Shown: piece after piece, positions 3,471 through 61,590 of the stretch
Layout of the letters: every line of letters starts with the position of its first letter
How positions within the stretch are numbered: position 1 is the first letter of the stretch
DNA from: Takakia lepidozioides
Taxonomy: Eukaryota; Plantae; Bryophyta
DNA: 64,000 nucleotides
Direction: 5' to 3'
NCBI GenBank assembly: GCA_030704615.1
Contig: CM060734.1
Span: 62,000,001-62,064,000 of the forward strand
Notes under the pieces: generated by a model
The model's input: the letters and a program-made list of their open reading frames with translations, nothing else
The model's database searches: none
Told to the model about the DNA's origin: nothing
Translations under genes and position numbers: made by a program

Positions 3471-5118
3471 AATTGTGCAGGTGAGGATTTGGCCACCATC
3501 CTTCAACTTGTTGGTGTTTCCATTCTACCTCATTCTGCTCAATCATGGCATATTGTTGTGACCTTGCAGGTCCTATTTTTACTGGGGAGGAGGAAAATTT
3601 GCATATGTTGTCCTGATGTATAAAACATTGGTTGTGCAGGCTGTGCTAGAGACTGGCCAGAGTAACGCATGATAGGTCAAAAAAGGACGATACTGAAGAA
3701 GAGAAGTATGTGCTTTGAGATTGTTTCCTTGACATACTTTCTGAGAACCGTTAAGAAGACTTTGTACCCTAGTTGTAGCATGGCACAAAGGCATATCGGT
3801 CTAGTCTATCTCCTCGTAGAATGATTTAGCATATCCCAACAATCGGAGGCTTGACACGGTGTAAGGTCCTTCGCTAGTAGGGTAATCAAGCTTATAATAG
3901 TGCACCTAAGCAGCATATCAATATTATCCAATGCTGAGGCTAAACAAGGCAAGGGAGGTGTCTATGGATAACTTATGACATAGCTTATAATTCCCAAGTG
4001 AAATAACAAAATTTGGATGGAAATTGAAAAACTTATGGAGGTAAGCATGCAAGGGGGTCAATATGCGACGCGAACATATTAATTGCTTTAAAGGAGTTGC
4101 TTGACTAAGTTCAAATGGACTATTTATGACAGGGAAGACTTTGAATGGTTGTGATGGTCTATTCACATGGCAGCAAGGAGATGGACCAATGACCGTAGGT
4201 TGACCATGTGTTTCACCACGACAGTGTTGAAGCTTGAGTGCTCATCTACAACGGCTATGGGCCTCGATATGCACAGTAGTGAAGCGTGTGTGTAGCGGTT
4301 ATTGGCTCTTGACCATGTGGGTTTTGACAGAGACAAATCGCTATCTTCTGTCATCTTCTCTCACCTTCTCTCCCACCTGTACACCAGATTCACATTCTTT
4401 TCAATCATTTATCTTCTATGCACTTCTTGCCTCCCACCAGCAAACAATCTCTTCTCTTGTATACTAGATTTTATTTGCTTTTGTCGGTTGCAGCCTACAT
4501 TTTACTTGCATCATTTATGCCAGTGTCAAAGCAAAGCAGAGCTAGCGGAGAATGAGCGATGACGACAGTGTCCTGTAGAGCTAACGAAGAAAGAGCGCTG
4601 ACGATAGGCCATGATTCTCGAGTTACTGTGCTTTTTAATTGCAGCTCTCATGCCTAGGTAAATGCTCAAAGACTAAGGCTATGTTGCATTGATGCTCTTG
4701 GCCCCCACATTTGTGGTTCTGCTGTGCACACTTGCCCTGCCAGTCTTTCCCCCATTGTGTGGAAGTGTGTGCATGTAATCGCGTGTATGAGAGGAGCTGG
4801 ATATGGTGACTACATAAACAACAACCTTACAAGCACTACGAGTAAGTGTTGGTATTTTTCATCTCCTGTCAACATAAGGTACGCAAGAATCTAAACCTAC
4901 ACGAGTCTTCTCTGTCACTTTCGATCATATATTTCCAAAAGAAAAATACAACTTAGCATCTGTCTAACATCTCAATATTAGCTTATTCATGGAAGCAATA
5001 ATATGTCTCTACAAAACAGATTATAAGCTATGGCTTCCTACATACTTGAGATCTACAAACCTGAGGTGAATAATAGATGCAATAGCCTAAGATGATCTTA
5101 GACATTTAAGGTTTTATC

Positions 5119-7480
5119 TTAGCCACTCTTCAGTGAAGGGGTAGCCTGTCCTGATGAAAGTAGACCTGGAAATGAGGGAACAACTGACCTCTGAGCATCA
5201 TGATGCATGACATTACTATTCATAGTTGCCAATGGTAGTCGGACATTCTCGCCATTTCCTCGGCGACTTGCCCTCATCCTTTGTAAGGCTCTCGCCATTG
5301 CTGTCTTTTGCAAATGGCTAGTAAAACCATAGTTCATCCCATGATAGATTCTCGGAGTTAGCTCCATTTGGAATAGTATTATGGAATGTCTCACCCATTT
5401 TTTGCACATTCTCAGAACTCTAGTAAGCTTCAAAGACTTATTGGTTTCTTTTCTCAACAATTTTTAATGCGGCCTTCTCACTCGCCTTCTGTCTTGCTGT
5501 ATGGGCATCTCTCTCCTTTGTACGAGCCCTCTCCTCTTTCAAGAGTCTCTTATTCTCTCATTCTTTTTCAGCCTTCCCTTAGTAGAGCCTTCTTTATCAT
5601 AATGGCTATGTATTCATCTACAGTCATGATGATGGAATTTCCATAATCCACCAAAGGTTCTGTGCCTTTCGTAGGACGTCAAAGAAACTCTGGCAAAACA
5701 AACATATTTGCAAGAGAGGACTGATCATTGCTTGAATACTGAGCACACTGAACATCCATACCTTGAGTAGAAGGCTCATGAGTGAAATTTTGCTGTTGTG
5801 GTAAGACATAGTATTGCTGGTCCACAGTAGCATCTATAGGCAGTGATGATGTAACAAGCACTTCATCACTTCCTTGCATAGTAATGTCCACAGTAGGATC
5901 TGATAGCCCCTCTTGCGTTTCTGCTCCAATTATAATGACATCAGGTGTTACTCCCTCATGGCCAGTACAATGAACATTATCAGTATGCATTGACAACAAA
6001 ACGTCAGTTGCTGCCTTGTTGCTGCCTCAGTCTCCCCTTCACTGTCGCTTGAAGGAACAACTTGAATGTTAGTGAATTGTTGGGATGACATTGTTTTTTC
6101 GTCCATTGCACGAGGATTTAGAGGCCAAATGCTAGTAGTTCGAAAACCTGCCATAATGTTTGCTGGTGTTAGAGCCTTCTGCAATGCTCGGTCAACCCAA
6201 CTAGCCAATGTAGACTTATCTGGTTCATTGAAATGCCTCTTAAGCATTTTAGAATCACGTGTAACTCTGAACGCAACTTTGAAATACTTTGAAACAAGAC
6301 ACATCCAATGGCTGAAGTGCATGTGACGTGTGCATTGGGAGTGTAACCATATCCAAGCCAATTTCCATAGCAAATGAAATAGCTTCTAGTGTCACATGAC
6401 TTCCATGATCGTCGAATATTAAAAAATGACGATCTTCAAGGGAAATATGTGGGACACTCTTCTGGAAGAAGGATAGCCACTTTGTGAATAACTTTGTTGT
6501 CATCCAAGCTTTCCCTTGTATAGCCATACATGGGCCCGGTCCACAATCCTTAACATAGTTTGCCATTATCTTCTCACCCTTGAAGATAAAGAAGTTGGGA
6601 AGGTGCTGATCTGCATTCACAACTACATTGACTGTTAACCATTCCCTGGATTTTGGAATAGTACTATAGACAAAATTAGAGCCTTTCTTTGCAATTACTC
6701 GTGCGCCAGAGTTACGGCCAATTTGTATACCAGATTCATCCGAGTTTCAGATATGTGTGGGTGGATAATTGTGTTTGTCATAGAGAAGCTGTAAATTGTT
6801 ATAGAAACCTTTGCAATGCTATGAAGTAAGAGCCTTTGCTCTAGCAACTTCTAGCCCTTCTGCCATCCGGAGCGATAGTTGTGGATGGCGGCGTTTGAAC
6901 CATTTCCACCACGAATCCCCTGGAATCCCTATTGTGAATGGAGTAACTCTGGTTTGAGTGAGCTCTGCTACTTTCAACCTCAGTTGAAGTTTTGTGATAG
7001 AATGTGCAATATCCTGCATTTTCAGAACCCATTCAACAAGAGTTGTTTCTTCACTTGGTGTGAGTACTGCCTTTGCTCCCACTTTCCTTTGAGTAATCTT
7101 TCCTGTAAAATGATCTCTCGATGAAGATTCAGGAATACTCCAATGATGTGCAGCTTGTCTTTGACTCATCTGACCTGTTTCCACTGCATCCATAGCTTCT
7201 TCAAGTTGATCATCAGTCCATTTGCCCCGCAAGACCTTGTCTCCAATTTTTTTTTGGATCCCTTGAAGTGCAAATCTTGCTGCTTTCAGGTTTTTCTTTT
7301 GCTCTATTGTTGTACCAGCTTGAGTCAGATTTTGGAGTGGTAGATATGATAGGAGATGATGGTGGAACATCTTCCAAAAGACTATTGTGAGATTGTCGAC
7401 GTTGTGGTAGAGAAGGTTGAACAATTGTTTGCTGTCCTTGAAGAAGCTCTTGAGATGATCGTCGAGTGCTGGCTACCATG
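5119..7480 (-). mobile_element. Decayed pogo/Fot-like (Tc1-mariner superfamily) DD35D transposase
   Basis: HTH_psq-like RGKWTDDQLEEAMDAV…MSQRQAA and CENP-B HTH (…WWKWFKRRHP). Catalytic NSDESG / LIFDDHGSH / HALQPLD with 35 aa between D2 and D3. In-frame stops at ~6819 and ~6748 and a frameshift at ~6290. Element ends not resolved (possibly ~3.9-8.5 kb). Confidence 0.9.
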
Positions 7481-11166: not shown

Positions 11167-12450
11167 ATGGCTCTGCATATTAGAGAAGGGTTGGCAGGGA
11201 GGAGGGAAGGGCACCCTTCAGCTCACCTAATGTGTACCTCTTCTTCACCAGCAATTTCTTTTCATTCTGGAATATGCGGCAGGGTGTCTCACCAAGAAAG
11301 CTTCGGAGGCGCATGTATTTCGACTTTGTCACTAGGGGTCTTATGCCCGCAGAAAAACTGTCTAATAGGCGTGTCTCCACGAGCGATGTATGGCTCTGAT
11401 GTGCTCCCAGGAGTGGCACGCCTTAGGGTCAGGCGAGCGGGCATACATCGGGGAGTTTCACGGCCTATGCGTTCCTCATGTGACAAACACAGCAGTCTGG
11501 CTTGTAGAACCAGCGTTGCTTTGGGATGGAGGAGGAGTACTCGACCCATCAGCCAGTTTTGCTCCATTGGAGGTAAGGGCTTCTCAGCAGGGTCTGAACA
11601 GAGGAGATTATCTGTAGCTGCAGTTCGATCTGGTGACAGTGATGCAGAGGTTGGGGGCGTCACCAGGAGGGCAGCCATAGTCGAGCGCAGCGAAAGCGCT
11701 ATTGAAGAGCTATTGCTTTTCTTTTTTCAGCTAGACCTCGCTATGCGATTGCAGCGGGCATTGAACCAGGATGCTTATGAAGTGGCGCAACAACTGCGCG
11801 AGAAAGTTGCAGAGGTAGAACAGGAAGTGGCCCGTCAGAGAGAAGCGAAGATGGGATCTTCATCCAAGGATGAAGCCCAAGACAATTCTATAACAATTTT
11901 GCAGCTAAGAGCAGAGCTACAGAAATCGATAGAAGAAGAGAACTATGCTGGGGCGGCTGCCCTGCGTGATAGATTATCTTCACTTGAAGCTGAATCCTTA
12001 GCGGCACAAGCAAGAGCGTTGGCGTTCCAGAAGCGCGACTTTCAGTTTCACTTAGGTCAGAAGATCAAGCACAAAATGTATGGCTACCGGGGCGTTGTAT
12101 GTGGGATGGATCCCTTGTGCTGTGAATCGGGGAAATGGGCAGAAGCGGCTGGAGTTGATGAGCTTCCTCGCGGCAGAAATCAACCCTTTTATCAGGTGTT
12201 GGTAGATATTAGAGAGCAGCCATCATTGATGCTGGCTTATGTGCCTGAAGAGAATCTTTCTTGCCCAGAGGAGGCTGACCTGGACCCCTTTGATCATCCG
12301 TACACCTACTTTTTGTTCTACGGTATGGATGGGGCAGGAGACTTCATACCATGCAAGCAGCTAAGAGAGAAATACAATGCACCCCGCCGGGAGTTGCCCT
12401 GGGATGAGGATGGGGGCAACTTGCCCTCTGGTACTGGAGGCCCTACTTGA
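11167..12450 (+). CDS. ClpF: Chloroplast Clp protease adaptor ClpF (UVR + YccV-like domains), intronless CDS
   Basis: Ser/Arg-rich transit-peptide-like N-terminus; ELLLFFFQLDLA; UVR motif (LQKSIEEENYAGAAALRD); YccV-like FHLGQKIKHKMYGYRGVVCGMDP…NQPFYQVLVD…AYVPEENL…FDHPY. Confidence 0.93.
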   Translation: MALHIREGLAGRREGHPSAHLMCTSSSPAISFHSGICGRVSHQESFGGACISTLSLGVLCPQKNCLIGVSPRAMYGSDVLPGVARLRVRRAGIHRGVSRPMRSSCDKHSSLACRTSVALGWRRSTRPISQFCSIGGKGFSAGSEQRRLSVAAVRSGDSDAEVGGVTRRAAIVERSESAIEELLLFFFQLDLAMRLQRALNQDAYEVAQQLREKVAEVEQEVARQREAKMGSSSKDEAQDNSITILQLRAELQKSIEEENYAGAAALRDRLSSLEAESLAAQARALAFQKRDFQFHLGQKIKHKMYGYRGVVCGMDPLCCESGKWAEAAGVDELPRGRNQPFYQVLVDIREQPSLMLAYVPEENLSCPEEADLDPFDHPYTYFLFYGMDGAGDFIPCKQLREKYNAPRRELPWDEDGGNLPSGTGGPT

Positions 12451-16942: not shown

Positions 16943-18371
16943 TGTGAGCTGCCTCGGGCCAACACCAAACAATCCCTTGCTCTGCAAGCCAGGGTTTATG
17001 CGGGTTTATCAAGTTAGGGCTCGCTTCCACCCTTCCCATATTTACAGTAAAAATGTCATTTGCTCCAGACATTCCGAACATTTTTCCCTTAGTTCTGTTC
17101 ACTTTTCCTGTAAATTGTTTATAAAAAGGGTAGAGAAAGAATGGCTCGTAGATTTAGGCCCGTGTTCGGAACAATTCTCGCATCACTCGCTCAAGCCTCC
17201 ATCCCGCATCCTTCATCAAACGCTTATGGATCGTTTAAACAGGTTGGTTTACTTTGAAAATTCGTCTTGTGCCAAACTTCTCAGTCTAGTAATACCTTTG
17301 AGGTCGGGTAGATGGGTCATCGATGGCCGTCTCTGGGTGCGCTGATGATGTGCAATCCGATCGCCGTGCAAGTTACTTTATGTCGGCTTCATTAAAAGAC
17401 GGTCTTATATCTAAGTATCATACGATTGAAGTACCCAAATCAGTTTCAGAGGATATGCTCAAGATTGTGGCGCTTGAAAGCAGATAATTGTGGGCAGGAC
17501 ATTGTGATCAGATTGTTTCGTCACCTTACAACTATTGTCGTTTAAACAAATCTTAGATCTCTAGAGATCTACATCAAATCAATTTGTCGGCCATTACCGC
17601 TGAGAAATTATGTACATAGTCGACCTCCCTTCCGAATCACTTCTGTTTGCAGCTTTGTATTATGTTTGTGGATCTGCTTCCAGCCAACCCATGATCTATC
17701 TCACAGTGAAGTGAGGGCCATGCGGTGCTATGAATAACAATATCGAATTTAACCACATTTGTTCTGGACGTAACACTAAACCCACGCTAATCTAGATATT
17801 TACGTCTAATGTTTAATAATATCCGTGATACACTTCAATTTGCAGCAAAGTACTGAACGGTGGCATGCAGAGTCCAGACTCTGCCAAGAATAGCTTGATT
17901 TATAAAAAAAGAAAACTTGGCCCGGAGAACTTAGATATCGATCTAAAACGGGGTTTTGAGCTCGAGAGAACACAATGATGCTGCAGCCAAACTCTATTTA
18001 AGAGTGTTCAATGAAGAGAGTCTAAGAAGGCAGTGGCTGAGTTCATCACCTACGTGTATAGATAGATGCCATCTCACTTGGATATCTCCATATATCCTCT
18101 CGGTAGCCCTCACTTAGAACTGTTTGTTTTGTAGAGACCAAATTCACAATCGAGTTGGTATCTGTAGGATTTCAGAACCTAGGTAGAGGTTTGCTTTTGG
18201 GGTTTTGCAGCAACTTCCTCAAATTCGTACACTTGGTCCTCCAAGTTGATTTTCGCAGGACGATCTTAGAGTGAGTACTACTTTTGGAAGCACTGGCCTC
18301 CTTATACTCGATTGAATTTCTCTCTAGACACAATTTTAAGCATAGATCTGGATCATCTTGCCAGAGTCACA

Positions 18372-20459
18372 ATGTCGAAGTCTTCATCAAGCATGCAGAA
18401 CTCGTGCTTGATACGACTGCAGCGCGATATCAAGGAGCTGGCGAGGGAGCCCATGGAAGGCATTCATGTCTGCGTCCATGAGAACAATATGAGGGGCATG
18501 TGTCTGGTTCTTTCGCCACTTGTTGGCCCTTTTCATGGTCTCCGACTGCACCTGGATGTCAGAATTCCAGAGTCCTATCCCAAGTGCCCACCCACAGTTT
18601 CCATTCAAACGCCGGTGAACCATCCCAATGTGTTCGGCAGGTATATTTGCTGCGATATTTTGAAAGCTGTGGACAATAACTCTGACTTCACAAACTACAA
18701 TGGAGGCTACACCCCCGCGTATCTCCTCAAGTACATCTTCCTTCAGCTTCTAAGCTTCTTCTCCGACGAGTATGTGGATCAAGACTATGGCGGCCGGCGG
18801 TTGAAGGTCGACACCAGTCGATCATACTCGTCAATATTCGATGAGTTCAGAATTTCTATGTCAGAAGTAGTGAAGAAATTCAGTTGTCAAACGTGCGGAT
18901 TCAACGTTCATTTGGGCGCAGTGGTGAGCGATTCTAGTATGCATATTGGCACAACGTCGAACTCTCCGTTGCCGTCCATTTCTTCTTCAGTAATGGAAAT
19001 AGACATGTTCTGCGAGGAAGATGATAATGAAGCTTGTGTTCTTGACAAGTTGGGTAACGACTGCTGGCTGACTATTCTGGATATGCTCTCAGATCAAGAT
19101 ATGCTTAAATTATCGCATGCTTATCGGGGGGCGAGGCGGGTGATGACCACCCACAACGTTCTCTTGCGCAGGCAGCTCATATGTTTCTATCTTCGCAAGA
19201 CATTTCTTGAATCCGTGCTTGGCATAGGGATCAGTGTAACCTTTCCTTCTCCACGAAAGGCAGAGAAAACAGTCGCGGTGTTCGATTTATTCTCGCACGA
19301 AGCTTTTCAGGAACACGGACTGCGCAAGGGGATCTGGGGCGAGAGATTCGAGATTTTTCTTCCAGTCATTCTAAATGATGAACACTTTCGCCGCGCAGAG
19401 CCGATCATTCAACAAGCAATGGTACAGTTGGTGAATTGGAAAGTAGACAGCTCTCTCAACGGTTCTATCAACGGAGCCTGGACCCCCTTCATGGTTTTGC
19501 AGACCATTCCATCGCTGATGAATACAATGGTGTTCAACCTCGTAAAATCCTGTGATGAGGAAGCCGAAGTTTCAGCGCTTGCAGGGACGACGGTGCTCAA
19601 GGCCTCTGAGAAAGCACTGCAGGGATATTGTCTTTTGTTCCATCTTTTCTCCAAGCTTTCGGCACGTTATCCAGAGGTTGAAGATGAAATCCGCAGAAAA
19701 GTTGGGGTCTTCATGCAGGATAGGGCAGGCCGAAGCAAGACTGCAACTCCCAATCTAGGCGAGTTTCTCACGTATCTTCTGTTGATCAAGGATATCAGTT
19801 GGTCAGAGTTTTGTGGCTTTTTCCTCGAAGAACTCCTCGCACGGAACGTGGTTTGGTACCTCGGTGCAAATCCGCATCTTGCGCACTTAGAGCCACGGAC
19901 CCATGTTTCTCAACTGAGGCTTCGTGACACCTTTCGTGCGAGTGCAGTATCCTTGAAACTCGTAATGTTCCAAATGATTTTCTTTTTCAGGATGAGAGGG
20001 TCCACAGACGAAATTGAGCAACGCTATGGATATCCATCCGAGGAGATGAGTTCATCTCTCTTTCGGCTCATCAAGGACATTTACGCTGTGAATGACTGGG
20101 GTGTTTTTCTGAAGCTGGTGAGATATCAGATTCCGGAGGGAGTCGCTTGGCAACCGCTTGTCGCTCACATGCTGCAGAACGCTATTCAGCTCAGCGAGCA
20201 CAGAAAGTACCATGAAGTTCCTTATACACCTCTTCAACTTTACTATTTTCGACAGCGCGTGGAACCTTCATGCCCCGCACCTACAGGGTGGGATCCTCGC
20301 ATACAACATCAGTTGTCTCCTTCAAATTTTAGGTCAGGCCGGAGTTTCTTTCCTGGGAACCCACAGAAAGGAAACAACCATAATCTAGGAAGAGGTCACC
20401 CCAGATCCCATACTGGTGTTTCAGGGCAAAGGAGAAGCTTTTCCGGTGGTAGGATGTAG
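18372..20459 (+). CDS. Intronless ~695-aa protein: N-terminal ubiquitin-conjugating (E2) domain, CxxC, F-box-like motif, large uncharacterised C-terminal domain
   Basis: RLQRDIKEL…GPFHG…IPESYPKCPPTV…HPNVFGRYICCDIL (HPN motif plus Cys at the catalytic position); CQTC; LDKLGNDCWLTILDMLSDQDMLKLS. Uninterrupted 2.1-kb ORF with first ATG at 18372. Confidence 0.88.
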   Translation: MSKSSSSMQNSCLIRLQRDIKELAREPMEGIHVCVHENNMRGMCLVLSPLVGPFHGLRLHLDVRIPESYPKCPPTVSIQTPVNHPNVFGRYICCDILKAVDNNSDFTNYNGGYTPAYLLKYIFLQLLSFFSDEYVDQDYGGRRLKVDTSRSYSSIFDEFRISMSEVVKKFSCQTCGFNVHLGAVVSDSSMHIGTTSNSPLPSISSSVMEIDMFCEEDDNEACVLDKLGNDCWLTILDMLSDQDMLKLSHAYRGARRVMTTHNVLLRRQLICFYLRKTFLESVLGIGISVTFPSPRKAEKTVAVFDLFSHEAFQEHGLRKGIWGERFEIFLPVILNDEHFRRAEPIIQQAMVQLVNWKVDSSLNGSINGAWTPFMVLQTIPSLMNTMVFNLVKSCDEEAEVSALAGTTVLKASEKALQGYCLLFHLFSKLSARYPEVEDEIRRKVGVFMQDRAGRSKTATPNLGEFLTYLLLIKDISWSEFCGFFLEELLARNVVWYLGANPHLAHLEPRTHVSQLRLRDTFRASAVSLKLVMFQMIFFFRMRGSTDEIEQRYGYPSEEMSSSLFRLIKDIYAVNDWGVFLKLVRYQIPEGVAWQPLVAHMLQNAIQLSEHRKYHEVPYTPLQLYYFRQRVEPSCPAPTGWDPRIQHQLSPSNFRSGRSFFPGNPQKGNNHNLGRGHPRSHTGVSGQRRSFSGGRM

Positions 20460-23213
20460 AAGCAAAGGCAACTGGTAGTTGCAATCTCAAAGACATCATG
20501 GGTGAGGTCAACAGTGCAGTAGCATTTGCATACATTGAGTAGAGTGAGAGGAGTAAATGCAATTTGTGTCCACATCACTAGAACGAGCCAGAGCAGATTT
20601 TGTATCTTCACTCTCCCACAACCTACGGATAGAGACTTGCAGATGGGAACACCTACCGCCTATGTCCAGCTTGCATAGGGCGCAGCCAGGAAATTGAAAC
20701 TGAAGAACACTTCTTCTTCTACTGCCCTCTATACTACGAGATCCGTGGGAGATTCCACTGTTTATTCAGAGGAACCTAAACTCTCACTGATATCTTCCAC
20801 TATGAGGATAAAAAATGCTTGGCAGCCTACCTGCACGAGGCCTTCACCCTTAGACAATCGCTAGAACATTAGTTCTTATTCTTGGGTTCTGGATTTGTTC
20901 CTCTCTCATGTTTTCTTCCATTTTGTCCCATAAGCTCTATGAGCTTTCCGCGGACGTTATAAAGCACCATTTCATTTCATTTCATTTCTCCTTTCAACAT
21001 GAATAATGTGAAGTCTGTGCATCGAAATCAGAGGGCAATGTTCAAGACTAGTACATATTGTCGTCGAACATCTCCGTCCTGTCCGCCTATGCTAGTCACG
21101 TCACAATGTGATAAGAATACTTATCAACCCATGTCCACCACAACTGCAAAACTTTCAAAATACCATCGGCACCTGTAGTGACAAACCAACACAAAGCGAA
21201 CAGCGGGAAACCTGTAGATAGTACCTAAGCACAAGGCGATAGTCTTTTCCTCACTTGCATCAACTTGCAGTTACAGTTCTTCCGTTACAGCAGTGACCAT
21301 GCGATGCTACAGATGTGTGCACCAAGTTCAGCTTCATGCCTACTCACCTCCCATTGATCGGGGAAATCGTCGTCTCATTGTTTCTACGTAATATAATACT
21401 TTGTCTTCTTCTTTAGTAAAGATATACCTGTCTCGTGAAGCTTACAAGGGGGCAACCTCCCTCAGAGCAGCTCTACAGAGCAAAAAATGGTATCAGAGGC
21501 ACTTCTCTGGCGACTAGTGTGGAAAGCCTCGTGGAAGCACAATGCAGGCACAATGCACGGATGCATCTCGCGCGATGAGCGTGAAGGTAACTTATGTGAA
21601 AGCCTGACCCGGCACCTGCAACCATGGATGCAGTGAGGAACCAATTGGCTTGGTTTGGTCATGTACATCGGCGCACAGTCAAGACAAAATGAATCTCTCC
21701 ATTTGGAGCCCTGATCCGATATAATGGAGCTGATTCTTGTAAGGCTGTCTGTTGAGCGCATTAAGTTCCGCCAGTAGTAGTGTCTTAGAAGTCTGTGATC
21801 AGCCCGTCCGAGAGCTTTCACTTGGCTTGAGCCTCAGAGATTCCTTTTGGGATGTACTATAATTTGAGGTTATCAAACCTGTAGAGTATTACTGAGGCAT
21901 ACTTGTGGACAATCTGGCTTTGGAAGACTCTCTCACAGAGGTGTATAATTCAGCAACCGAGCTCTGGAGCATGGGGGTGCAGCTGTGTGCGGTCGCAGTC
22001 TCAGCCTTATTGCCAAAGGCACTATGAGGCCTAGAAATCTAGAGCTTGAGGTCCTGTTGGATTCTTTTGTGATTTACAGTATATGTCAGGACTGAACTAT
22101 GGTGTGCAACTATTTTGAACAACAAGGAGTCCTTAAGGCTTCTACTGAGAGCACCATGTAAACGTAGAGAATTGTCATGGTGCGAAAAATGGACCTGCTC
22201 AATACTGGACCACATGGCAATAACGGAGAGCGTCAAATCGATAGTAGAGCAATGGCAAAGGGTAGATGCCAACCCAAGCGGAGAACTCACATGCAGGAAC
22301 GCAAGGGAACAAGATCCCAAAGGGTTTGCGGGTGTGGCTGCGGCAGACTCTTCCTGTCTCGCACCCTGCTTCTTCTCTCTTTCTTTCCCTTTTGCAACAC
22401 ACAACCTGCAATCAACCTTAAGATGTTTTATGCACTGCATCCTGCAGAGGCCTGCAGCATCGAGACCTGTGTGGATCCTTCATTTGTAGTTGAATCCTCA
22501 TTGATCACATTTCGAGACTCCATTTTTCTTCCCTAGTCCTCAAGATGCACTCGAATTTGTGCCCCCTCCTGTTTCTGCATCCTGTACTCGTGAGTACTGC
22601 AGTTTGCAGCCCTGGATTCAAACTGCGTGTGTCGTGAATTTCCCAGATGACAAAACAGTAACTACTGATCTACGACAGCACGATATCTTATTTGGAGACA
22701 TGCCCGAGTCTCCTGTAATCTGAGCGAGGAGGTGGACCATTGGGGCTGAGCCATACAGCCAAGGATTCCGTATGCATCTCCGTTCTTAGCTGGAAAATTC
22801 CAGGCTTTTTTCATATACGTGTTTTCAGGTGAATGCTTTTATGTTATATCCATGGACGCGATTCTCGAGGGGTTTGCGAGTTTGCTACACCTTTCAGTCA
22901 GGCTGGATAGCTAGCTGCCCGCAAAACACTGCCTCTTTGCTTAGGCATTGGACGAGCAGGGAATACCATAAGAAACTTGAGCATGATCGAGTCGTTGTAA
23001 CCGTTACCGGGGTTCTGTATGCTTAGCGACTGTGATCGAGTTGCTTTTGCAGAACTCTGTTCTACATTTGGTGAAATTGGGGAAGATTTGGTGCCTCTCC
23101 TTCCCTCTGTAGATTAATGTTGTGATAACGGACAGAATCCAGAACGGCGTTCCTACATTTGGAGAAAATAAGGGGAAATTCCAGTGGCTTTCCTTCCGTA
23201 TTCTTCGAGACCC

Positions 23214-45679: not shown

Positions 45680-48600
45680 ATGAGGGGTCCTGTTCAAAGG
45701 GGTCATTCAGATGTTTCGGGTCCCTTGAATATAAAGCTTGGGGAATTGCTCAAATATCATTGGAAAGATTGGCTGCTGATTGTGGGCCTCGTAGTCCTTG
45801 AGATTCCTCTTCAGAACATCCACCCTCATAAGCGCTATGTGGGTAGATGGATGTTTGTTACGGGAGAGCTGAGATACCCATCAAAGAGAGAGACAGTCCC
45901 TGTTGCGGGTGTGGCGGTATGTCTTCCTCATGTTTCTCTTACTTTGTTGGTTTCTGTGGACTATTAGAACACAATCACTTCTTCTGTTTTCTTCAATTTC
46001 TTTTTCAACACATTATAACAGCAGTTTGTCTGTAAATTGGGTGTGTCAAAAATGCTGAGGGTGAGCCTTGGCCCCAGACCTGATGTCAGTGGAAAAGTTT
46101 CTCTTCAAAAATGTTGCCATCCAGTTGTGGCACTGCAGGCCTTGCAATTGGTCTGGACATTGATCTCACTCATGTTGTGGGAACTCATAACTGCTGCTTT
46201 TCTGATGCTGCTGGCCTTAACTTCAGTGTTCACCACTTCATTTGGTTTCGTTGGTGGGCTGAAGGTTAGACCATAATGTTTGCACTCGTGGATGTGAGCA
46301 GGTCGTTGCTTTGGTGATACCTGTTGTGGTTGTTTTGGGTTATTATTTTCAGAGAAGAGAAGTCAGAGATTTGCACCAAGCTGTACTTGGTATGACTTCG
46401 GCCCCCTTATGTGCAGTTCCAGGAATTGTGTATTTGGGCATTGGCGATGAAAATGTGGATGTGCATATCCTCCTTAGATGATTGGGCTCTCTTGCTAGTG
46501 TTTGATTGGGTTGACAATACAGTTTGTTTCTTATTCAGCGCAATTAACAGCATGTTGGGGTTCCTCCTTCCCCATCTCGTCACCTGTAATCATTCACACA
46601 CATCTGGTCATGGATCCTGGTTGTTACTGAATTGGTGCTCTTCTCCTCCAGGACTTTTTAGTGCAGTCATACTCACTGCAGTGATTACGGATTCCCTCAA
46701 GGACGGAGTGGGGCGTCCGAGACCAGACTTTTACGCCCGGTGTTTTGGGAGTCCTACTGCCCAAGATGTAATTACAGTCTGCAGTTGTCTTCTATCATTT
46801 TTCCCTCTAGCATTGTCCATATCTTTGTGCTTTCCGGATAGTCTCCAGAAACAATTGGTGTGGCATGCATCGAAGCCCAGTGAGGGTACAATTTTATGTC
46901 TTCTATATGCAATGTTTACACACAAATTATGGAGATTCTTCAATGTAAAGTTGTGTGGATTGGAGAAATTCTGATGGTAGCAATGTCGAGTTGCTCAATG
47001 GCAGTATTATGATTCAGATGGTAATGTGGCATGCAATGGATCTGCATCTGTCATCCGGGAGGGCCGCAAGAGTTTTCCCAGCGGCCATGCGTCTTGTGCG
47101 TTCTGAACCTCTATTTGCGGCTATATGCACACAATAATATTGGACAGGACTTGTCTTCAGTTGGTTTCTACAGGAAAAATCCTGGCAATGTGGGAGTGCT
47201 GTATACAATCTGCTTAAGTTGTTGTGGTTACTTGGTGGTGCTCAGGGTCATTTGCTGGAATGGGCTATTTGGCCATGTATCTGGCAGGCAAGTGTGGTAT
47301 GTTTGATAGGAGGGGTCACTCTTGGAAGCTGCTGCCAGTAAGCTGTCCCCTGCTCTGGGCAATCTTTGTTGGAATATCACGTCTAGAGGACTATTGGCAC
47401 CACTGGACAGATGTATTTGGTGGGGCTCTTATAGGTAAGACAATTAGCCCCTGCCACATTACTTCCACTTGGTGACCACAATACCAGCAGTGTCGCTCCT
47501 ATATGTTTGCGGGACATCTAAATGCTAATTACTTGGTGCTCATTACTAAAGTGGATCTCTCACTTTCAGAAGAAGCAATGAGCTTAATGCAGGCTTATCT
47601 AAAGACACAGACTCCCCCTCTCTTCTCTCTTGCTCTCTCGCTCTCTGTGTCTCGCCCTACCCTAAATGTCCTTCCTTTGTTGCCACATTAGTTTTAGAAT
47701 TTTACACTGGTTCTTTCTGCGTTCTGGGTCCTCTGGGCCTCGCATGTCGGTTATAAAAAATTACCCTTCTTTCTTTCTTGCACACAGGTTCTGTTTTCCC
47801 ACTTCCATCAGTGTCATTGCTCTCTGATCCTCCTCAGCCCAGCTGAGATCACCGACAGCTCAAGGTTATGTAGAGACACCTGCTGCAACATTAGAGGTTA
47901 TTCTGACAGTATCCTCACCATGACTACTGTGGCCTGGAAGGTCATCGCATATATTACTGTTTTATCTTTTGATACAGCCTCTTATCTACACCGACGTTGT
48001 TGATACCCAAGAGTTTGAACTTGGACCGCAGCTGTTTATATACTGTTGAATGCTTTGACTGCCAGCAACTATATTGAAGGAAAGTGAACAGAGGAGTACC
48101 ATGGGTTGGAAGTTGAATATGATAATGGAGAACTGCCTGGAACCTGGTGGATTGATGAAGCACAAGTTTTGGTCCGTTTGCAATGCAATGTGTATCAATT
48201 GGTGGTGTGCAACAAAAAACTGCATTGCTGATTTGTTGCATTCGCAGGATTGGGTGCAGCTTATTTCTTCTATCGCCAACACTTTCCAAGCGTGTTTGAC
48301 AATGATGGTGAGTCTTTATTGTGGTCAGTTTTTCCTGCAATCCTTCTCCATTAGTGGTTGTTCTGCTCAAACTGGGCAACCGTCCACAAGGCTACAGCAA
48401 GCAACGTCTTATGAGTGCATTCTGTAAGGATCATATGGGATGTTGATATTTGGATGCCTTGCAATTATAGTTGGTATCAACCTCCACAAAAAGGGGCAGT
48501 AGTTGCTGTAGTTAATGCATGCTTCCAGTCAGGCACTGCCATGCTGCAGTTGTTGAAAAGCATGTTCGGGACAGAGGTAGAAGATCTGGATGTTGCCTGA

Positions 48601-60883: not shown

Positions 60884-61590
60884 TTATTCAGCCGTATTCT
60901 CAAACACATCAGGCACATACCCAGCCTCCTTCATCTGCCCAGACAATCTACTCAGCGCAGCATGGATTTCCTCAATCTGTGGATGCATTTTGTCATCCAC
61001 AATGAATGTTCGCACTTCGGTGTTGACCTCAATGTAGCTACGACCTGGCTCCTTCTGCACACCTCTGGCCTTCATCATTTTCCAAACTGATGTGGCATCA
61101 TCCCACCTGCCAGCTGCAGCATGGATGTCTGATAGCAACACATAAGTTGCGGCATCTTGTTCATCCCACTTGAGGATAGATGTTGCCGCACGTTCAGCCA
61201 TCTCCACATTGCCATGGATTCTGCAGGCACCAAGCAAGGCCTTCCACACCACAACATCTGGATTGATTGGCATTTTATTAATCAGGTCCACTGCCTCATC
61301 CAGTTGTCCCGCACGTCCAAGAAGATCCACCATGCAGCCAAAGTGCTTTACTGTCGGAGTAACACCATGATCTTGACTCAGGGAATCGAAGTAGTTCTTC
61401 CAGTAGGCCAGTGTGGCTGCATGCAGAGAGAACACATATAAAGGTGATATTGTCCGGCTTCAAGCCGTTCTTTTACATTCCTTCAAATAGTTGCAGGACC
61501 TCCCTATGACAACCATGTTGGGCATATCCTGCGATCATCAAATACCCACGACACCACATGTCGTTCAGTCACATTGTCAATTACTCCCTT
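60884..61590 (-). pseudogene. PLS-E-E+ PPR fragment
   Basis: HGVTPTVKHFGCMVDLLGRAGQLDEA…KEPGRSYIEV…MKEAGYVPD, truncated before the DYW core. Frameshifted upstream repeats. Confidence 0.92.

What the first reader, a model, noticed from the sequence alone, without database searches (positions are those of the whole stretch)
18372..20459. Intronless E2 + F-box-like + large unknown domain fusion: candidate self-contained ubiquitination module, possibly horizontally acquired
Seen: an intact 2.1-kb single-exon ORF next to an intron-rich neighbour. It has a UBC fold with HPN and a Cys at the catalytic position (YICCDIL), a lone CxxC, an F-box-like segment (LDKLGNDCWLTILDMLSDQDMLKLS; the usual Pro is Gly) and a ~430-aa C-terminal domain (CFYLRKTF…VLGIG, FDLFSxEAF, ASEKALQGY, PNLGEFL, LARNVVW). 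Established: canonical plant E2s are ~150-200 aa, and F-boxes normally sit in separate SCF substrate receptors. Inference: from memory this architecture matches an uncharacterised family I associate with fungi and some protists, not angiosperms. That points to HGT or differential loss. The protein could bring its own E2 to SKP1/CUL1, or act as an E2/E3 hybrid. Possible GT-AG 5'-UTR introns (~18183-18258) hint at host-style expression.
Basis: partly seen in the sequence, partly recalled or inferred. Interest (0 to 1): 0.8.

Follow-up and report, generated by a model that had tools for sequence, protein, structure and literature searches.

The report
Fungal-origin E2–F-box ligase in moss
A moss-type plant genome carries an intact, intronless gene that came long ago from the ancestors of mycorrhizal fungi and joins three ubiquitin-system parts in one protein (an E2 enzyme, an F-box and a UBR4-like E3 module), so it looks like a self-contained protein-tagging machine whose function nobody has tested.

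Summary
The ORF is real: 18372-20459 (+), 695 codons, no stop. It has a UBC/E2 domain with HPN and Cys93, a CxxC knuckle, a diverged F-box and a roughly 400-aa C-terminal domain.

The host is not an angiosperm. It is a bryophyte, probably a moss: the ClpF neighbour is 77% identical to Sphagnum, and a PLS-E+ PPR gene lies nearby.

The architecture belongs to a large uncharacterised eukaryotic family: 2,326 cluster representatives, found in fungi, a diatom and Naegleria.

In a careful ML tree the window protein groups with moss and Selaginella orthologues (100/98). That plant clade is sister to Glomeromycotina (100/98) and nested inside Endogonales, chytrids and Dikarya. An AU test rejects fungal monophyly without plants (p = 1.5e-6).

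This indicates an ancient fungus-to-plant transfer, probably before mosses and lycophytes split, followed by vertical descent and many losses. Li et al. 2018 had already proposed fungal origin for what is very likely the Selaginella copy.

What I found described in no paper searched: the C-terminal domain folds like the UBR4 hemiRING-UZI E3 module (Z 19.8; yeast Ubr1 Z 10.6), but it lacks UBR4's C2HC zinc ligands.

The most likely function is a single-chain E2-E3 enzyme that may also dock to SKP1. This is untested, and expression is unproven.

The parts
18372..20459 (+). Complete single-exon coding sequence (695 aa plus stop)
   Evidence: ORF listing. One tblastn hit in the window at 100%. The source DNA run covers 17000-20609 in one contig at depth about 53, the same as the flanks.
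18381..18875 (+). UBC (E2) catalytic domain, residues about 4-168. HPN is at residues 84-86 (18621-18629) and the catalytic Cys93 at 18648-18650.
   Evidence: Pfam UQ_con E 8.4e-14. PDB sequence hits to UBE2A/UBE2N. The family UBC profile hits Rad6-type and UBE2D-type E2s at about 1e-25. Foldseek matches E2 structures. H84 and C93 are invariant in 21 diverse members.
18885..18896 (+). CxxC knuckle (C172, C175) just after the UBC domain
   Evidence: Nearly invariant in alignment A5, but a CxxC in this position occurs in only 58 of 100 UBC-bearing family members. Model pLDDT here is about 92.
18951..19022 (+). Disordered linker, residues 194-217
   Evidence: pLDDT below 50 in the full-length model. 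Variable and gapped in the alignments.
19038..19175 (+). Diverged F-box, residues 223-268 (three helices). The Pro of the LP motif is Gly228.
   Evidence: The homologous segment passes Pfam F-box/F-box-like in relatives, including Naegleria P0023 and P0163. The profile hits solved F-boxes. Structural matches to SKP1-bound F-boxes: Z 4.5-5.4, rmsd 1.6-2.2 A. Loss of the Pro is shared by all plant and Glomeromycotina copies.
19176..19406 (+). RING-like (hemiRING-like) subdomain with a long beta-hairpin, residues about 269-345. C271 and H338 are invariant.
   Evidence: It is part of the Z 19.8 match to the UBR4 E3 module, which starts at UBR4 residue 4833. RNF4 RING matches model residues 47-112 at Z 3.8, rmsd 1.8 A. 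C271 occurs in 120/123 and H338 in 119/123 UBC-bearing members.
19407..20267 (+). UZI-like helical bundle, residues about 346-632
   Evidence: VIA-align aligns model residues 44-387 (protein 266-609) to UBR4 4833-5183: Z 19.8, 297 residues, rmsd 4.1 A. Yeast Ubr1 1218-1641 gives Z 10.6, and everything unrelated scores Z 5.4 or less. S412, K456 and R491 are near-universal.
20268..20456 (+). Conserved C-terminal extension (residues 633-667) followed by a disordered Arg/Gly-rich tail (671-695)
   Evidence: Alignment A1. pLDDT below 50 from residue 671. An RG-rich tail is also present in Glomeromycotina copies but not in Ceratodon.

Best explanation
This is a functional, single-copy nuclear gene of a moss-type bryophyte. 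It descends from an intronless gene of the stem lineage of arbuscular-mycorrhizal fungi (Glomeromycotina, or a close extinct relative). The transfer probably went into an early land plant before mosses and lycophytes diverged. The gene was then inherited vertically and lost in most plant lineages.

The protein is a one-chain ubiquitin-ligase assembly: a catalytically competent-looking E2 (UBC) domain, a short zinc-knuckle-like CxxC, an F-box, and a RING-like plus helical module with the fold of the UBR4/Ubr1 hemiRING-UZI E3 module.

Inferred mechanism (not shown):
1. E1 charges Cys93 with ubiquitin.
2. The C-terminal UBR-type module engages its own E2~Ub in cis and positions or activates it, as UBR4 does with UBE2A in trans.
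3. The F-box, which sits where UBR4 has its E2-affinity helices, either docks the enzyme to SKP1 (with or without cullin) or serves as a structural spacer.

The substrates are unknown.
For: Gene reality and host:
- The ORF is intact.
- DNA depth is even across ORF and flanks in one contig, and exact short contigs occur in two other samples.
- Neighbours are plant genes: ClpF is 77% identical to Sphagnum, and there is a PLS-E+ PPR gene.
- G+C and GC3 are like the host's ClpF.

Family:
- The C-domain profile finds 2,326 cluster representatives (741 at E<=1e-30), and 122 of 177 fetched proteins carry an N-terminal UBC.
- Named members are Glomeromycotina, Endogonales, chytrids, Mycena, Dactylella, the diatom Seminavis and Naegleria.

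Transfer:
- IQ-TREE (LG+C20 PMSF) on the C-domain gives plants 100/98, window plus mosses 96/89, plants plus Glomeromycotina 100/98, and then Endogonales 98/95.
- The AU test rejects fungal monophyly excluding plants (delta lnL 63, p 1.5e-6).
- The UBC domain alone also groups plants with Glomeromycotina (SH-aLRT 95).
- Plants and Glomeromycotina share loss of the F-box LP proline and a D-C/A-W motif, whereas Endogonales keep LP.
- The gene is intronless in Rhizophagus, Ceratodon, a metagenomic moss and here.
- The Ceratodon and Selaginella copies sit among plant genes on Mb-scale scaffolds.

Constraint: dN/dS is 0.23 between two moss copies.

Fold:
- AF2 gives pLDDT 86.5 and pTM 0.85 for the full length, and pLDDT 89.5 for the C-region.
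- UBR4 E3 module: Foldseek E 1.7e-4; VIA Z 19.8 and 19.5. Ubr1: Z 10.6. Both come top in a Foldseek-independent search of 48,161 chains.
- UBR4 biology is taken from PMC10873205.
Against: - No biochemical or expression evidence. The only possible RNA trace is one 194-nt contig in a run whose RNA label is a guess.
- The UBR4 zinc ligands (CxxC...HxxC) are not kept. Only C271 and H338 are invariant, so the RING-like part may be zinc-free or may not bind E2 at all.
- No sequence-level similarity to UBR4 or Ubr1 was detected, so the relationship rests on predicted structure.
- The F-box lacks the LP proline and fails Pfam thresholds in the plant/Glomeromycotina clade.
- I could not inspect model coordinates or PAE, so a cis E2-E3 contact is not shown.
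- A single ancient transfer requires at least six losses: no liverwort, Sphagnum, Diphasiastrum, fern or seed-plant protein appeared, although these taxa (named) are in the database. Physcomitrium did not appear either.
- The AU groups were fixed after the tree had been seen.
- Several tree rows are of unknown taxon.
Confidence: 0.6

Rival explanations
1. The gene has the same fungal origin, but plants received it more than once or more recently. For example, an unsampled or extinct sister lineage of crown Glomeromycotina could have donated it separately to a moss ancestor and to the Selaginella lineage, or it could have moved from plant to plant. On this reading there was no single transfer into the land-plant ancestor.
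For: The distribution in plants is very patchy. Only Ceratodon-type mosses, this moss and Selaginella were found, although liverworts, Sphagnum, Diphasiastrum, ferns, conifers, angiosperms and zygnematophytes are in the same database. The stems leading to the Selaginella (0.44) and Bryopsida-type (0.69) groups are long.
Against: Plants are monophyletic at 100/98 and their internal topology mirrors the species tree, with mosses separate from the lycophyte. The loss of the F-box Pro and the D-C-W motif are shared by all plant copies. Two donations from the same unsampled lineage is less parsimonious than one, but it is not excluded.
Confidence: 0.22
2. No transfer occurred. The family is ancient in eukaryotes and the plant copies are vertical survivors of differential loss. 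Their place beside Glomeromycotina would then be a phylogenetic artefact.
For: The family occurs in distant eukaryotes: Naegleria, a diatom, and, by Atlas cluster labels, rotifers and ciliates. The window protein has a short branch (0.33), so slow evolution could inflate its similarity to slow-evolving fungal copies.
Against: Nesting is supported at three successive nodes (100/98, 98/95 and deeper) under a site-heterogeneous model. The AU test gives p 1.5e-6. The UBC domain tree gives independent agreement. There is a shared rare F-box change. No green-algal copy was detected.
Confidence: 0.06
3. Functional rival: the protein is an ordinary SCF substrate receptor or SKP1-binding protein. Its C-terminal domain binds substrates rather than acting as an E3 module. 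The fused UBC either supplies ubiquitin to SCF-bound targets or is a non-catalytic (UEV-like) binding domain.
For: F-box proteins normally carry a C-terminal substrate-binding domain. Members without any UBC domain, such as the Naegleria F-box plus C-domain protein, keep the same invariant C-domain residues. The C2HC zinc site that UBR4 needs for activity is absent.
Against: HPN and the catalytic Cys are invariant over the whole family, which argues against a dead UBC. The only strong structural relatives of the C-domain are two E2-recruiting E3 modules, both solved with a Rad6-type E2. The F-box has lost its most conserved SKP1-contact proline in this clade.
Confidence: 0.3
4. Artefact: fungal (mycorrhizal or endophyte) DNA mis-assembled into a plant scaffold.
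For: The best sequence matches are to Glomeromycotina. Bryophyte samples often contain fungi.
Against: One source contig spans 17000-20609 at the same depth (about 53) as the flanking single-copy DNA. Plant genes lie on both sides in the window. A host-wide high-copy LINE-like repeat sits 160 bp downstream. The protein is only 45-52% identical to any fungal sequence and groups with other plants. Orthologues lie within plant chromosomes in Ceratodon and Selaginella.
Confidence: 0.02

Closest known systems
UBR4 (and Arabidopsis BIG) hemiRING-UZI E3 module; PDB 8B5W and 8BTL (PMC10873205, PMC11668491)
   Same: The fold matches over about 300 residues: a RING-like beta-hairpin subdomain packed on a helical bundle (Z 19.8, rmsd 4.1 A). 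The first invariant Cys (C271) falls about where UBR4 Cys4838 does, inferred from the start points of the structural alignment. The module sits at the C-terminus of the protein. In UBR4 it recruits and mildly activates a Rad6-type E2.
   Different: There is no detectable sequence similarity. The C2HC zinc ligands are reduced to one Cys and one His. There is no UBR box or giant scaffold. Here the E2 is fused in cis and an F-box precedes the module.
Yeast Ubr1 RING plus following helical domain, in complex with Ubc2; PDB 7MEY
   Same: It is the second-best structural match (Z 10.6, 262 residues, Ubr1 1218-1641). It is likewise an E2-recruiting module of an N-degron ligase.
   Different: Ubr1 has a full two-zinc RING, a separate Ubc2-binding region and a UBR box. 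None of these is seen here.
E2-E3 hybrid enzymes UBE2O and BIRC6 (from my own knowledge of the literature)
   Same: One polypeptide carries a UBC domain plus the elements that select and modify substrates.
   Different: Those proteins have no F-box and no UBR-type module. Their UBC lies centrally or at the C-terminus, and they are not related to this family beyond the UBC fold.
SCF F-box substrate receptors (SKP2, FBXW7, Cdc4 and others)
   Same: The three-helix F-box superposes at 1.6-2.2 A on SKP1-bound F-boxes. Relatives pass the Pfam F-box models at the homologous segment.
   Different: The LP proline is lost in the plant/Glomeromycotina clade. This protein is below Pfam threshold. An E2 is fused upstream. 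The downstream domain is E3-like rather than WD40, LRR or Kelch.
Selaginella 'ubiquitin-conjugating protein' reported as fungus-derived (Li et al. 2018, PMC5982333: R. irregularis ERZ95571.1 and S. moellendorffii XP_002963132.1)
   Same: Very likely the same family. It pairs a UQ_con-only annotated protein of Rhizophagus with one of Selaginella, and the direction of transfer is the same. My tree puts the Selaginella copies in the same plant clade as the window protein.
   Different: That paper treated it as a Selaginella-specific acquisition and did not describe the F-box or the C-terminal fold. The moss copies found here push the event back and widen it. I could not match the accession numbers directly.
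PpMACRO2, a Mucoromycota-derived macro2 gene in bryophytes (Wang et al. 2020, PMC7181705)
   Same: It is a precedent for a gene passing from mycorrhiza-like Mucoromycota fungi into early land plants and being kept in bryophytes (abstract).
   Different: It is an unrelated protein family, and it has a demonstrated developmental role in Physcomitrium. No function is known here.

Membership tests
Ubiquitin-conjugating enzyme (UBC/E2) superfamily | UBC fold recognised by Pfam UQ_con above the gathering score | tested here: met
   51.8 bits against a cut-off of 27, E 8.4e-14. Foldseek matches many E2 structures with TM (by target) 0.7-0.79.
Ubiquitin-conjugating enzyme (UBC/E2) superfamily | HPN motif and catalytic Cys at the canonical spacing | tested here: met
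   H84-P85-N86 and C93 are present. H84 and C93 are invariant in 21 diverse members and C93 is nearly invariant in 59.
Ubiquitin-conjugating enzyme (UBC/E2) superfamily | Forms an E1-dependent ubiquitin (or UBL) thioester | not testable with these tools
   This needs an in vitro charging assay with a C93A control.
F-box proteins | Sequence match to Pfam F-box (PF00646) or F-box-like (PF12937) | tested here: not met
   The window protein gives no hit at E<=1. The homologous segment of relatives does pass: 19 and 14 of 59 members, for example P0023 at 4e-9 and P0163 at 2e-8. The family profile hits solved F-boxes at E 0.003-1.
F-box proteins | Three-helix F-box fold | tested here: met
   Model residues 1-48 of the C-region superpose on FBXL17, FBH1, FBXL5, SKP2, cyclin F, FBXW7, beta-TrCP, Cdc4 and others at Z 4.5-5.4, rmsd 1.6-2.2 A.
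F-box proteins | Conserved Leu-Pro at the start of helix 1 | tested here: not met
   L227-G228 in the window. The Pro is also lost in every plant and Glomeromycotina copy, but kept in Endogonales, Naegleria and the diatom.
F-box proteins | Binds SKP1 | not testable with these tools
   No complex prediction or binding assay is available.
UBR-type hemiRING/RING-UZI E3 module (UBR4, Ubr1) | Shared fold of the RING-like subdomain plus helical UZI bundle | tested here: met
   Foldseek E 1.7e-4, prob 1.00. VIA-align Z 19.8 and 19.5 for UBR4 and 10.6 for Ubr1, ranked first and second among 48,161 chains, with the next unrelated match at Z 5.4 or less. A UBR4-family Atlas cluster also appears (TM 0.36).
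UBR-type hemiRING/RING-UZI E3 module (UBR4, Ubr1) | C2HC zinc site (UBR4 C4838, C4841, H4887, C4890) required for activity | tested here: not met
   Only C271 (where UBR4 has C4838) and H338 are conserved. The second Cys position is L/T/S and there is no HxxC. The upstream CxxC is present in only 58 of 100 members, so it cannot be a general substitute.
UBR-type hemiRING/RING-UZI E3 module (UBR4, Ubr1) | Detectable sequence homology (Pfam E3_UbLigase_R4 or a profile hit to UBR4/Ubr1) | tested here: not met
   No Pfam hit at E<=1. The family profile searched against all PDB sequences at E<=10 finds no UBR protein.
UBR-type hemiRING/RING-UZI E3 module (UBR4, Ubr1) | Recruits and activates an E2~Ub | not testable with these tools
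   This needs discharge and auto-ubiquitination assays.
Fungus-to-plant horizontally transferred genes | Recipient sequences nested within the donor group with strong support | tested here: met
   Plants plus Glomeromycotina 100/98, then Endogonales 98/95, then chytrids and Dikarya. AU p 1.5e-6. The UBC-only tree agrees.
Fungus-to-plant horizontally transferred genes | Gene physically integrated in the recipient genome (not contamination) | tested here: met
   Even depth and a contig spanning the ORF and its flank. Plant neighbours here and in Ceratodon, Selaginella and a metagenomic moss.
Fungus-to-plant horizontally transferred genes | Absent from the recipient's sister lineages (green algae and other plants) | tested here: inconclusive
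   No algal, liverwort, fern or seed-plant hit in two word-indexed searches, although such taxa are in the database.

The most novel reading that the evidence does not exclude
The gene is a molecular relic of the very first plant-mycorrhiza contacts. On this reading a stem-Glomeromycotina fungus donated a complete one-chain ubiquitin ligase (E2 + F-box + zinc-poor UBR-type E3 module) to the common ancestor of living land plants. That would place physical intimacy between the two lineages before crown embryophytes. It would also reveal an undescribed, pan-eukaryotic class of self-contained E2-E3 enzymes in which a UBR4-like module works on a fused E2.
Probability: 0.3. Interest if true: 0.8.

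Novelty: new variant of a known kind. Interest (0 to 1): 0.62.

Why it matters
Evolution. The finding turns a one-species HGT note (Selaginella, 2018) into a clade-level event. The topology is: Endogonales, then Glomeromycotina beside a plant clade made of mosses and a lycophyte. This gives a relative-time link between stem arbuscular-mycorrhizal fungi and early land plants, and adds a second example beside PpMACRO2 of Mucoromycota genes kept by bryophytes.

Ubiquitin biology. The fold result says that the recently defined UBR4 hemiRING-UZI module is not confined to giant N-degron ligases. It also exists, in a version lacking UBR4's zinc ligands, in thousands of compact proteins fused to an E2 and an F-box. 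These proteins are 600-750 aa, intronless in several species and predicted with high confidence. They would therefore be convenient for testing how a UZI-type module activates an E2, and what an F-box does next to one.

Tried and rejected
- The full-length word-index search timed out. I repeated it on residues 240-660.
- A word search with a 57-sequence alignment did not reach beyond the first search.
I used 59 sequences instead.
- Rfam found nothing in the window.
- Ten flanking ORFs (13-29 kb) gave no Pfam hit, so the 'intron-rich neighbour' stays unverified.
- I considered that the post-UBC CxxC together with C271 and H338 rebuilds the UBR4 zinc site. I rejected this as a family rule because only 58 of 100 UBC-bearing members have a CxxC there. 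It could still hold in this clade, but I could not check coordinates.
- I tried to assign the fused UBC to the Rad6 subfamily, which would fit a UBR-type partner. Rad6-type and UBE2D-type E2s tie at about 89-91 bits, so this is unresolved.
- dN/dS for the window gene itself is not measurable because dS is saturated.
- RNA evidence: no listed holder is on record as RNA. The single 194-nt exact contig comes from a run whose RNA label is a guess.
- Li et al.'s accession numbers could not be matched to my protein ids.
Full report
**1. The observation**

The ORF listing reports one long ORF at 18312..20459 (+). Its first ATG is at 18372 and gives 695 aa. At the local G+C of about 47%, 695 stop-free codons have a chance of roughly 1e-16 (my calculation).

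The N-terminus aligns with the N-termini of all homologues, so 18372 is the likely start and no upstream coding exon is needed. tblastn finds a single copy in the window.

Pfam finds UQ_con at residues 15-133 (E 8.4e-14) and nothing else above threshold. PDB sequence hits are E2 enzymes such as UBE2A and UBE2N.

**2. The host genome**

The evidence points to a bryophyte instead.
- The window carries a PLS-class PPR fragment with E and E+ motifs at 60887-61435 (-) and a ClpF-like ORF (UVR + YccV) at 11167-12447 (+).
- The best ClpF match is a Sphagnum cluster at 77% identity, followed by liverworts, Diphasiastrum and Ceratodon.
- At 77% the host is not one of the sequenced Sphagnum species.
- Earlier notes by other agents call this genome a moss (Takakia or Sphagnum-type). 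I only confirm 'bryophyte, probably a moss'.

The DNA is genuinely part of this genome.
- In the likely source run, one 3,874-nt contig covers 17000-20609 at depth about 53, against about 57 for the downstream single-copy flank.
- Two runs from other samples hold exact short contigs inside the ORF: 20086-20279 in a run guessed to be RNA, and 19185-19359 in a plant metagenome.
- Base composition resembles the host's ClpF gene.

So this is integrated host DNA, not fungal contamination. Transcription is not shown.

**3. The family**

A word-index search with residues 240-660 returned 23 proteins of 640-730 aa.
- Most are from Glomeromycotina: Geosiphon, Acaulospora, Rhizophagus, Glomus, Funneliformis, Gigaspora, Scutellospora and Diversispora, at 45-51% identity.
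- Plant hits are the moss Ceratodon purpureus, Selaginella moellendorffii and two unnamed moss-like sequences.
- A Naegleria F-box protein also appeared.

An exhaustive HMM search with a profile of the C-terminal region found 2,326 cluster representatives at E<=1e-3, of which 741 were at E<=1e-30. Of 177 proteins fetched, 122 have a UBC domain N-terminal to this region.

Named members beyond those above are Endogonales (Jimgerdemannia), many chytrids, Mycena, Dactylella and the diatom Seminavis. Atlas clusters add Ascomycota (some with an inserted TerD domain), rotifers and ciliates.

The fusion is therefore the standard architecture of a large, unnamed eukaryotic family, not a local accident.

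**4. Phylogeny**

A careful IQ-TREE analysis (LG+C20+F+G4 PMSF; 55 rows, 411 columns of the C-region) gave the following.
- Plants are monophyletic (100/98), split into Selaginella paralogues and a moss group.
- The window protein is sister to the Ceratodon-type sequences (96/89).
- Glomeromycotina are monophyletic (100/97), with Geosiphon basal.
- Plants plus Glomeromycotina group together (100/98).
- Endogonales and an unnamed sequence join next (98/95), then chytrids and Dikarya, then the diatom-type sequences and Naegleria.

Further tests agree.
- Forcing the fungi together without the plants costs 63 lnL units and is rejected (AU p = 1.5e-6).
- A tree of the UBC domain alone also joins plants with Glomeromycotina (SH-aLRT 95) and then Endogonales (84). 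The gene therefore moved as a unit.
- A rare character agrees. All plant and Glomeromycotina copies have lost the Pro of the F-box LP motif and share a D-(C/A)-W motif. Endogonales, Naegleria and the diatom keep LP.

The gene is intronless here and in Rhizophagus, Ceratodon and a metagenomic moss. The Selaginella gene model is about 310 nt longer than its coding sequence.

The Ceratodon, Selaginella and metagenomic-moss copies lie among ordinary plant genes: Dof, SWI3, LHC, P450, PPR and an amino-acid transporter. Two moss copies differ with dN/dS of 0.23.

The best reading is one old transfer from the Glomeromycotina stem, or a close extinct relative, into a plant that predates the moss-lycophyte split, followed by many losses. 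No copy was found among liverwort, Sphagnum, Diphasiastrum, fern, conifer, angiosperm or zygnematophyte proteins, although one search shows that these are in the same database. Two donations from the same unsampled fungal lineage cannot be excluded.

**5. Prior literature**

Li et al. 2018 (PMC5982333) list a Selaginella UQ_con protein (XP_002963132.1) paired with R. irregularis ERZ95571.1. They state that Selaginella acquired it from fungi. This is very likely the same family, but I could not match accession numbers.

They did not report moss copies, the F-box or the C-terminal fold. Wang et al. 2020 (PMC7181705) provide a precedent for Mucoromycota-derived genes in bryophytes. I found no paper describing a UBC-F-box-UZI architecture.

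**6. Structure**

With a 59-sequence alignment AlphaFold2 gives mean pLDDT 86.5 and pTM 0.85 for the whole protein. Only residues 194-217 and 671-695 are disordered. The C-region alone (residues 223-695) gives pLDDT 89.5.

The N-terminal part matches E2 structures.

For the C-region, Foldseek has only two significant PDB hits, both the UBR4 E3 module: 8B5W and 8BTL, E 1.7e-4. VIA-align gives these results.
- UBR4: Z 19.8, 297 residues, rmsd 4.1 A, aligning protein residues 266-609 to UBR4 4833-5183.
- Yeast Ubr1 residues 1218-1641: Z 10.6.
- Both rank first and second in a Foldseek-independent comparison with 48,161 chains. The next matches, at Z 5.4 or less, are F-boxes.
- More than 15 SKP1-bound F-boxes align to residues 223-270 at 1.6-2.2 A.
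- The RNF4 RING aligns to residues 269-334 (Z 3.8).

F-box homology is also supported by sequence. Among 59 family members, 19 pass Pfam F-box and 14 pass F-box-like, at exactly the homologous segment. The family profile hits the F-boxes of SKP2, KDM2B, FBXW7 and Cdc4.

**7. What differs from UBR4**

UBR4 activity needs a C2HC zinc site made of C4838, C4841, H4887 and C4890 (PMC10873205). Here only C271 (aligned with C4838) and H338 are invariant, in 120 and 119 of 123 UBC-bearing members. The second Cys position is L, T or S, and there is no HxxC.

The CxxC after the UBC domain could supply two ligands in this clade. It is present in only 58 of 100 members, so it is not a family rule. No sequence similarity to UBR proteins is detectable.

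The fused UBC resembles Rad6-type and UBE2D-type E2s equally well.

**8. Mechanism**

Shown:
- an apparently catalytically intact E2 domain;
- an F-box fold;
- a UBR-type E3-module fold;
- strong conservation and purifying selection.

Inferred:
- The C-terminal module holds or activates the enzyme's own E2~Ub in cis, as UBR4 does in trans with UBE2A.
- The F-box occupies the position of UBR4's E2-affinity helices. It either links the enzyme to SKP1 or has become a structural element, given the lost proline.

I put about 0.6 on the overall package: a real gene of fungal origin encoding a single-chain E2-E3. Within that I put about 0.8 on fungal origin and about 0.45 on the cis E2-E3 mechanism specifically.

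The main functional rival is a conventional SKP1-bound receptor whose C-domain binds substrates.

**9. Verdict**

It is wrong on the host (not an angiosperm) and on timing (ancient, with orthologues that follow the plant tree), and part of it was already published. The identification of the C-terminal domain appears to be new.

Noticed in passing
window 20620-20990: A very high-copy repeat starts about 160 bp after the stop codon. Summed contig depth reaches 1e5-5e5, against about 53 for unique DNA, and it is present in all four runs. It reads like the 3' end of a LINE ORF2, with a Cys/His zinc-knuckle motif, and ends in a (CATTT)n tail.
   Followed up: partly
window 6822-7424 (-): A 201-aa ORF with HTH_psq and HTH_Tnp_Tc5 domains, so a pogo/Tc5 (CENP-B-like) transposase remnant. 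Li et al. 2018 list a CENP-B-like HTH_Tnp_Tc5/DDE_1 gene among their fungus-to-plant candidates.
   Followed up: no
window 11167-12447 (+): A single-exon ClpF-like gene (UVR + YccV-like). At 427 aa it is longer than the 330-360 aa of most plant ClpF proteins, because only about 60% of the query aligns. The best match is Sphagnum at 77%.
   Followed up: partly
window 60887-61435 (-) and 46411-46971 (+): A PLS-class PPR fragment with E and E+ motifs (an RNA-editing-factor type), and a weak PAP2 phosphatase fragment. Both look like exons of larger genes.
   Followed up: no
window 20382-20456 (protein residues 671-695); P0003, P0007, P0010: The window protein ends in a short Arg/Gly-rich disordered tail. 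Glomeromycotina copies have long RGG-type tails at the same place, but Ceratodon-type moss copies have none. The window copy also has the shortest branch of all plant copies.
   Followed up: partly
P0016; P0024, P0169, P0170, P0171 (Selaginella): Selaginella has at least two diverged paralogue groups of this gene. One group has several near-identical copies, and one gene model is 1,118 aa long.
   Followed up: no
ESM Atlas clusters: An Ascomycota subfamily of about 930 aa carries a TerD domain together with UBC, F-box-like and the same C-terminal fold. A rotifer cluster of about 594 aa also has the fold. Naegleria and about a third of the fetched members lack the UBC domain altogether.
   Followed up: no
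L002 (Logan SRR32476553 contig, protein P0026): An unnamed 822-aa member is sister to the Endogonales copies (100/100) and keeps the LP motif. Its organism is unknown. If it proved to be a plant, the transfer history would need revisiting.
   Followed up: partly
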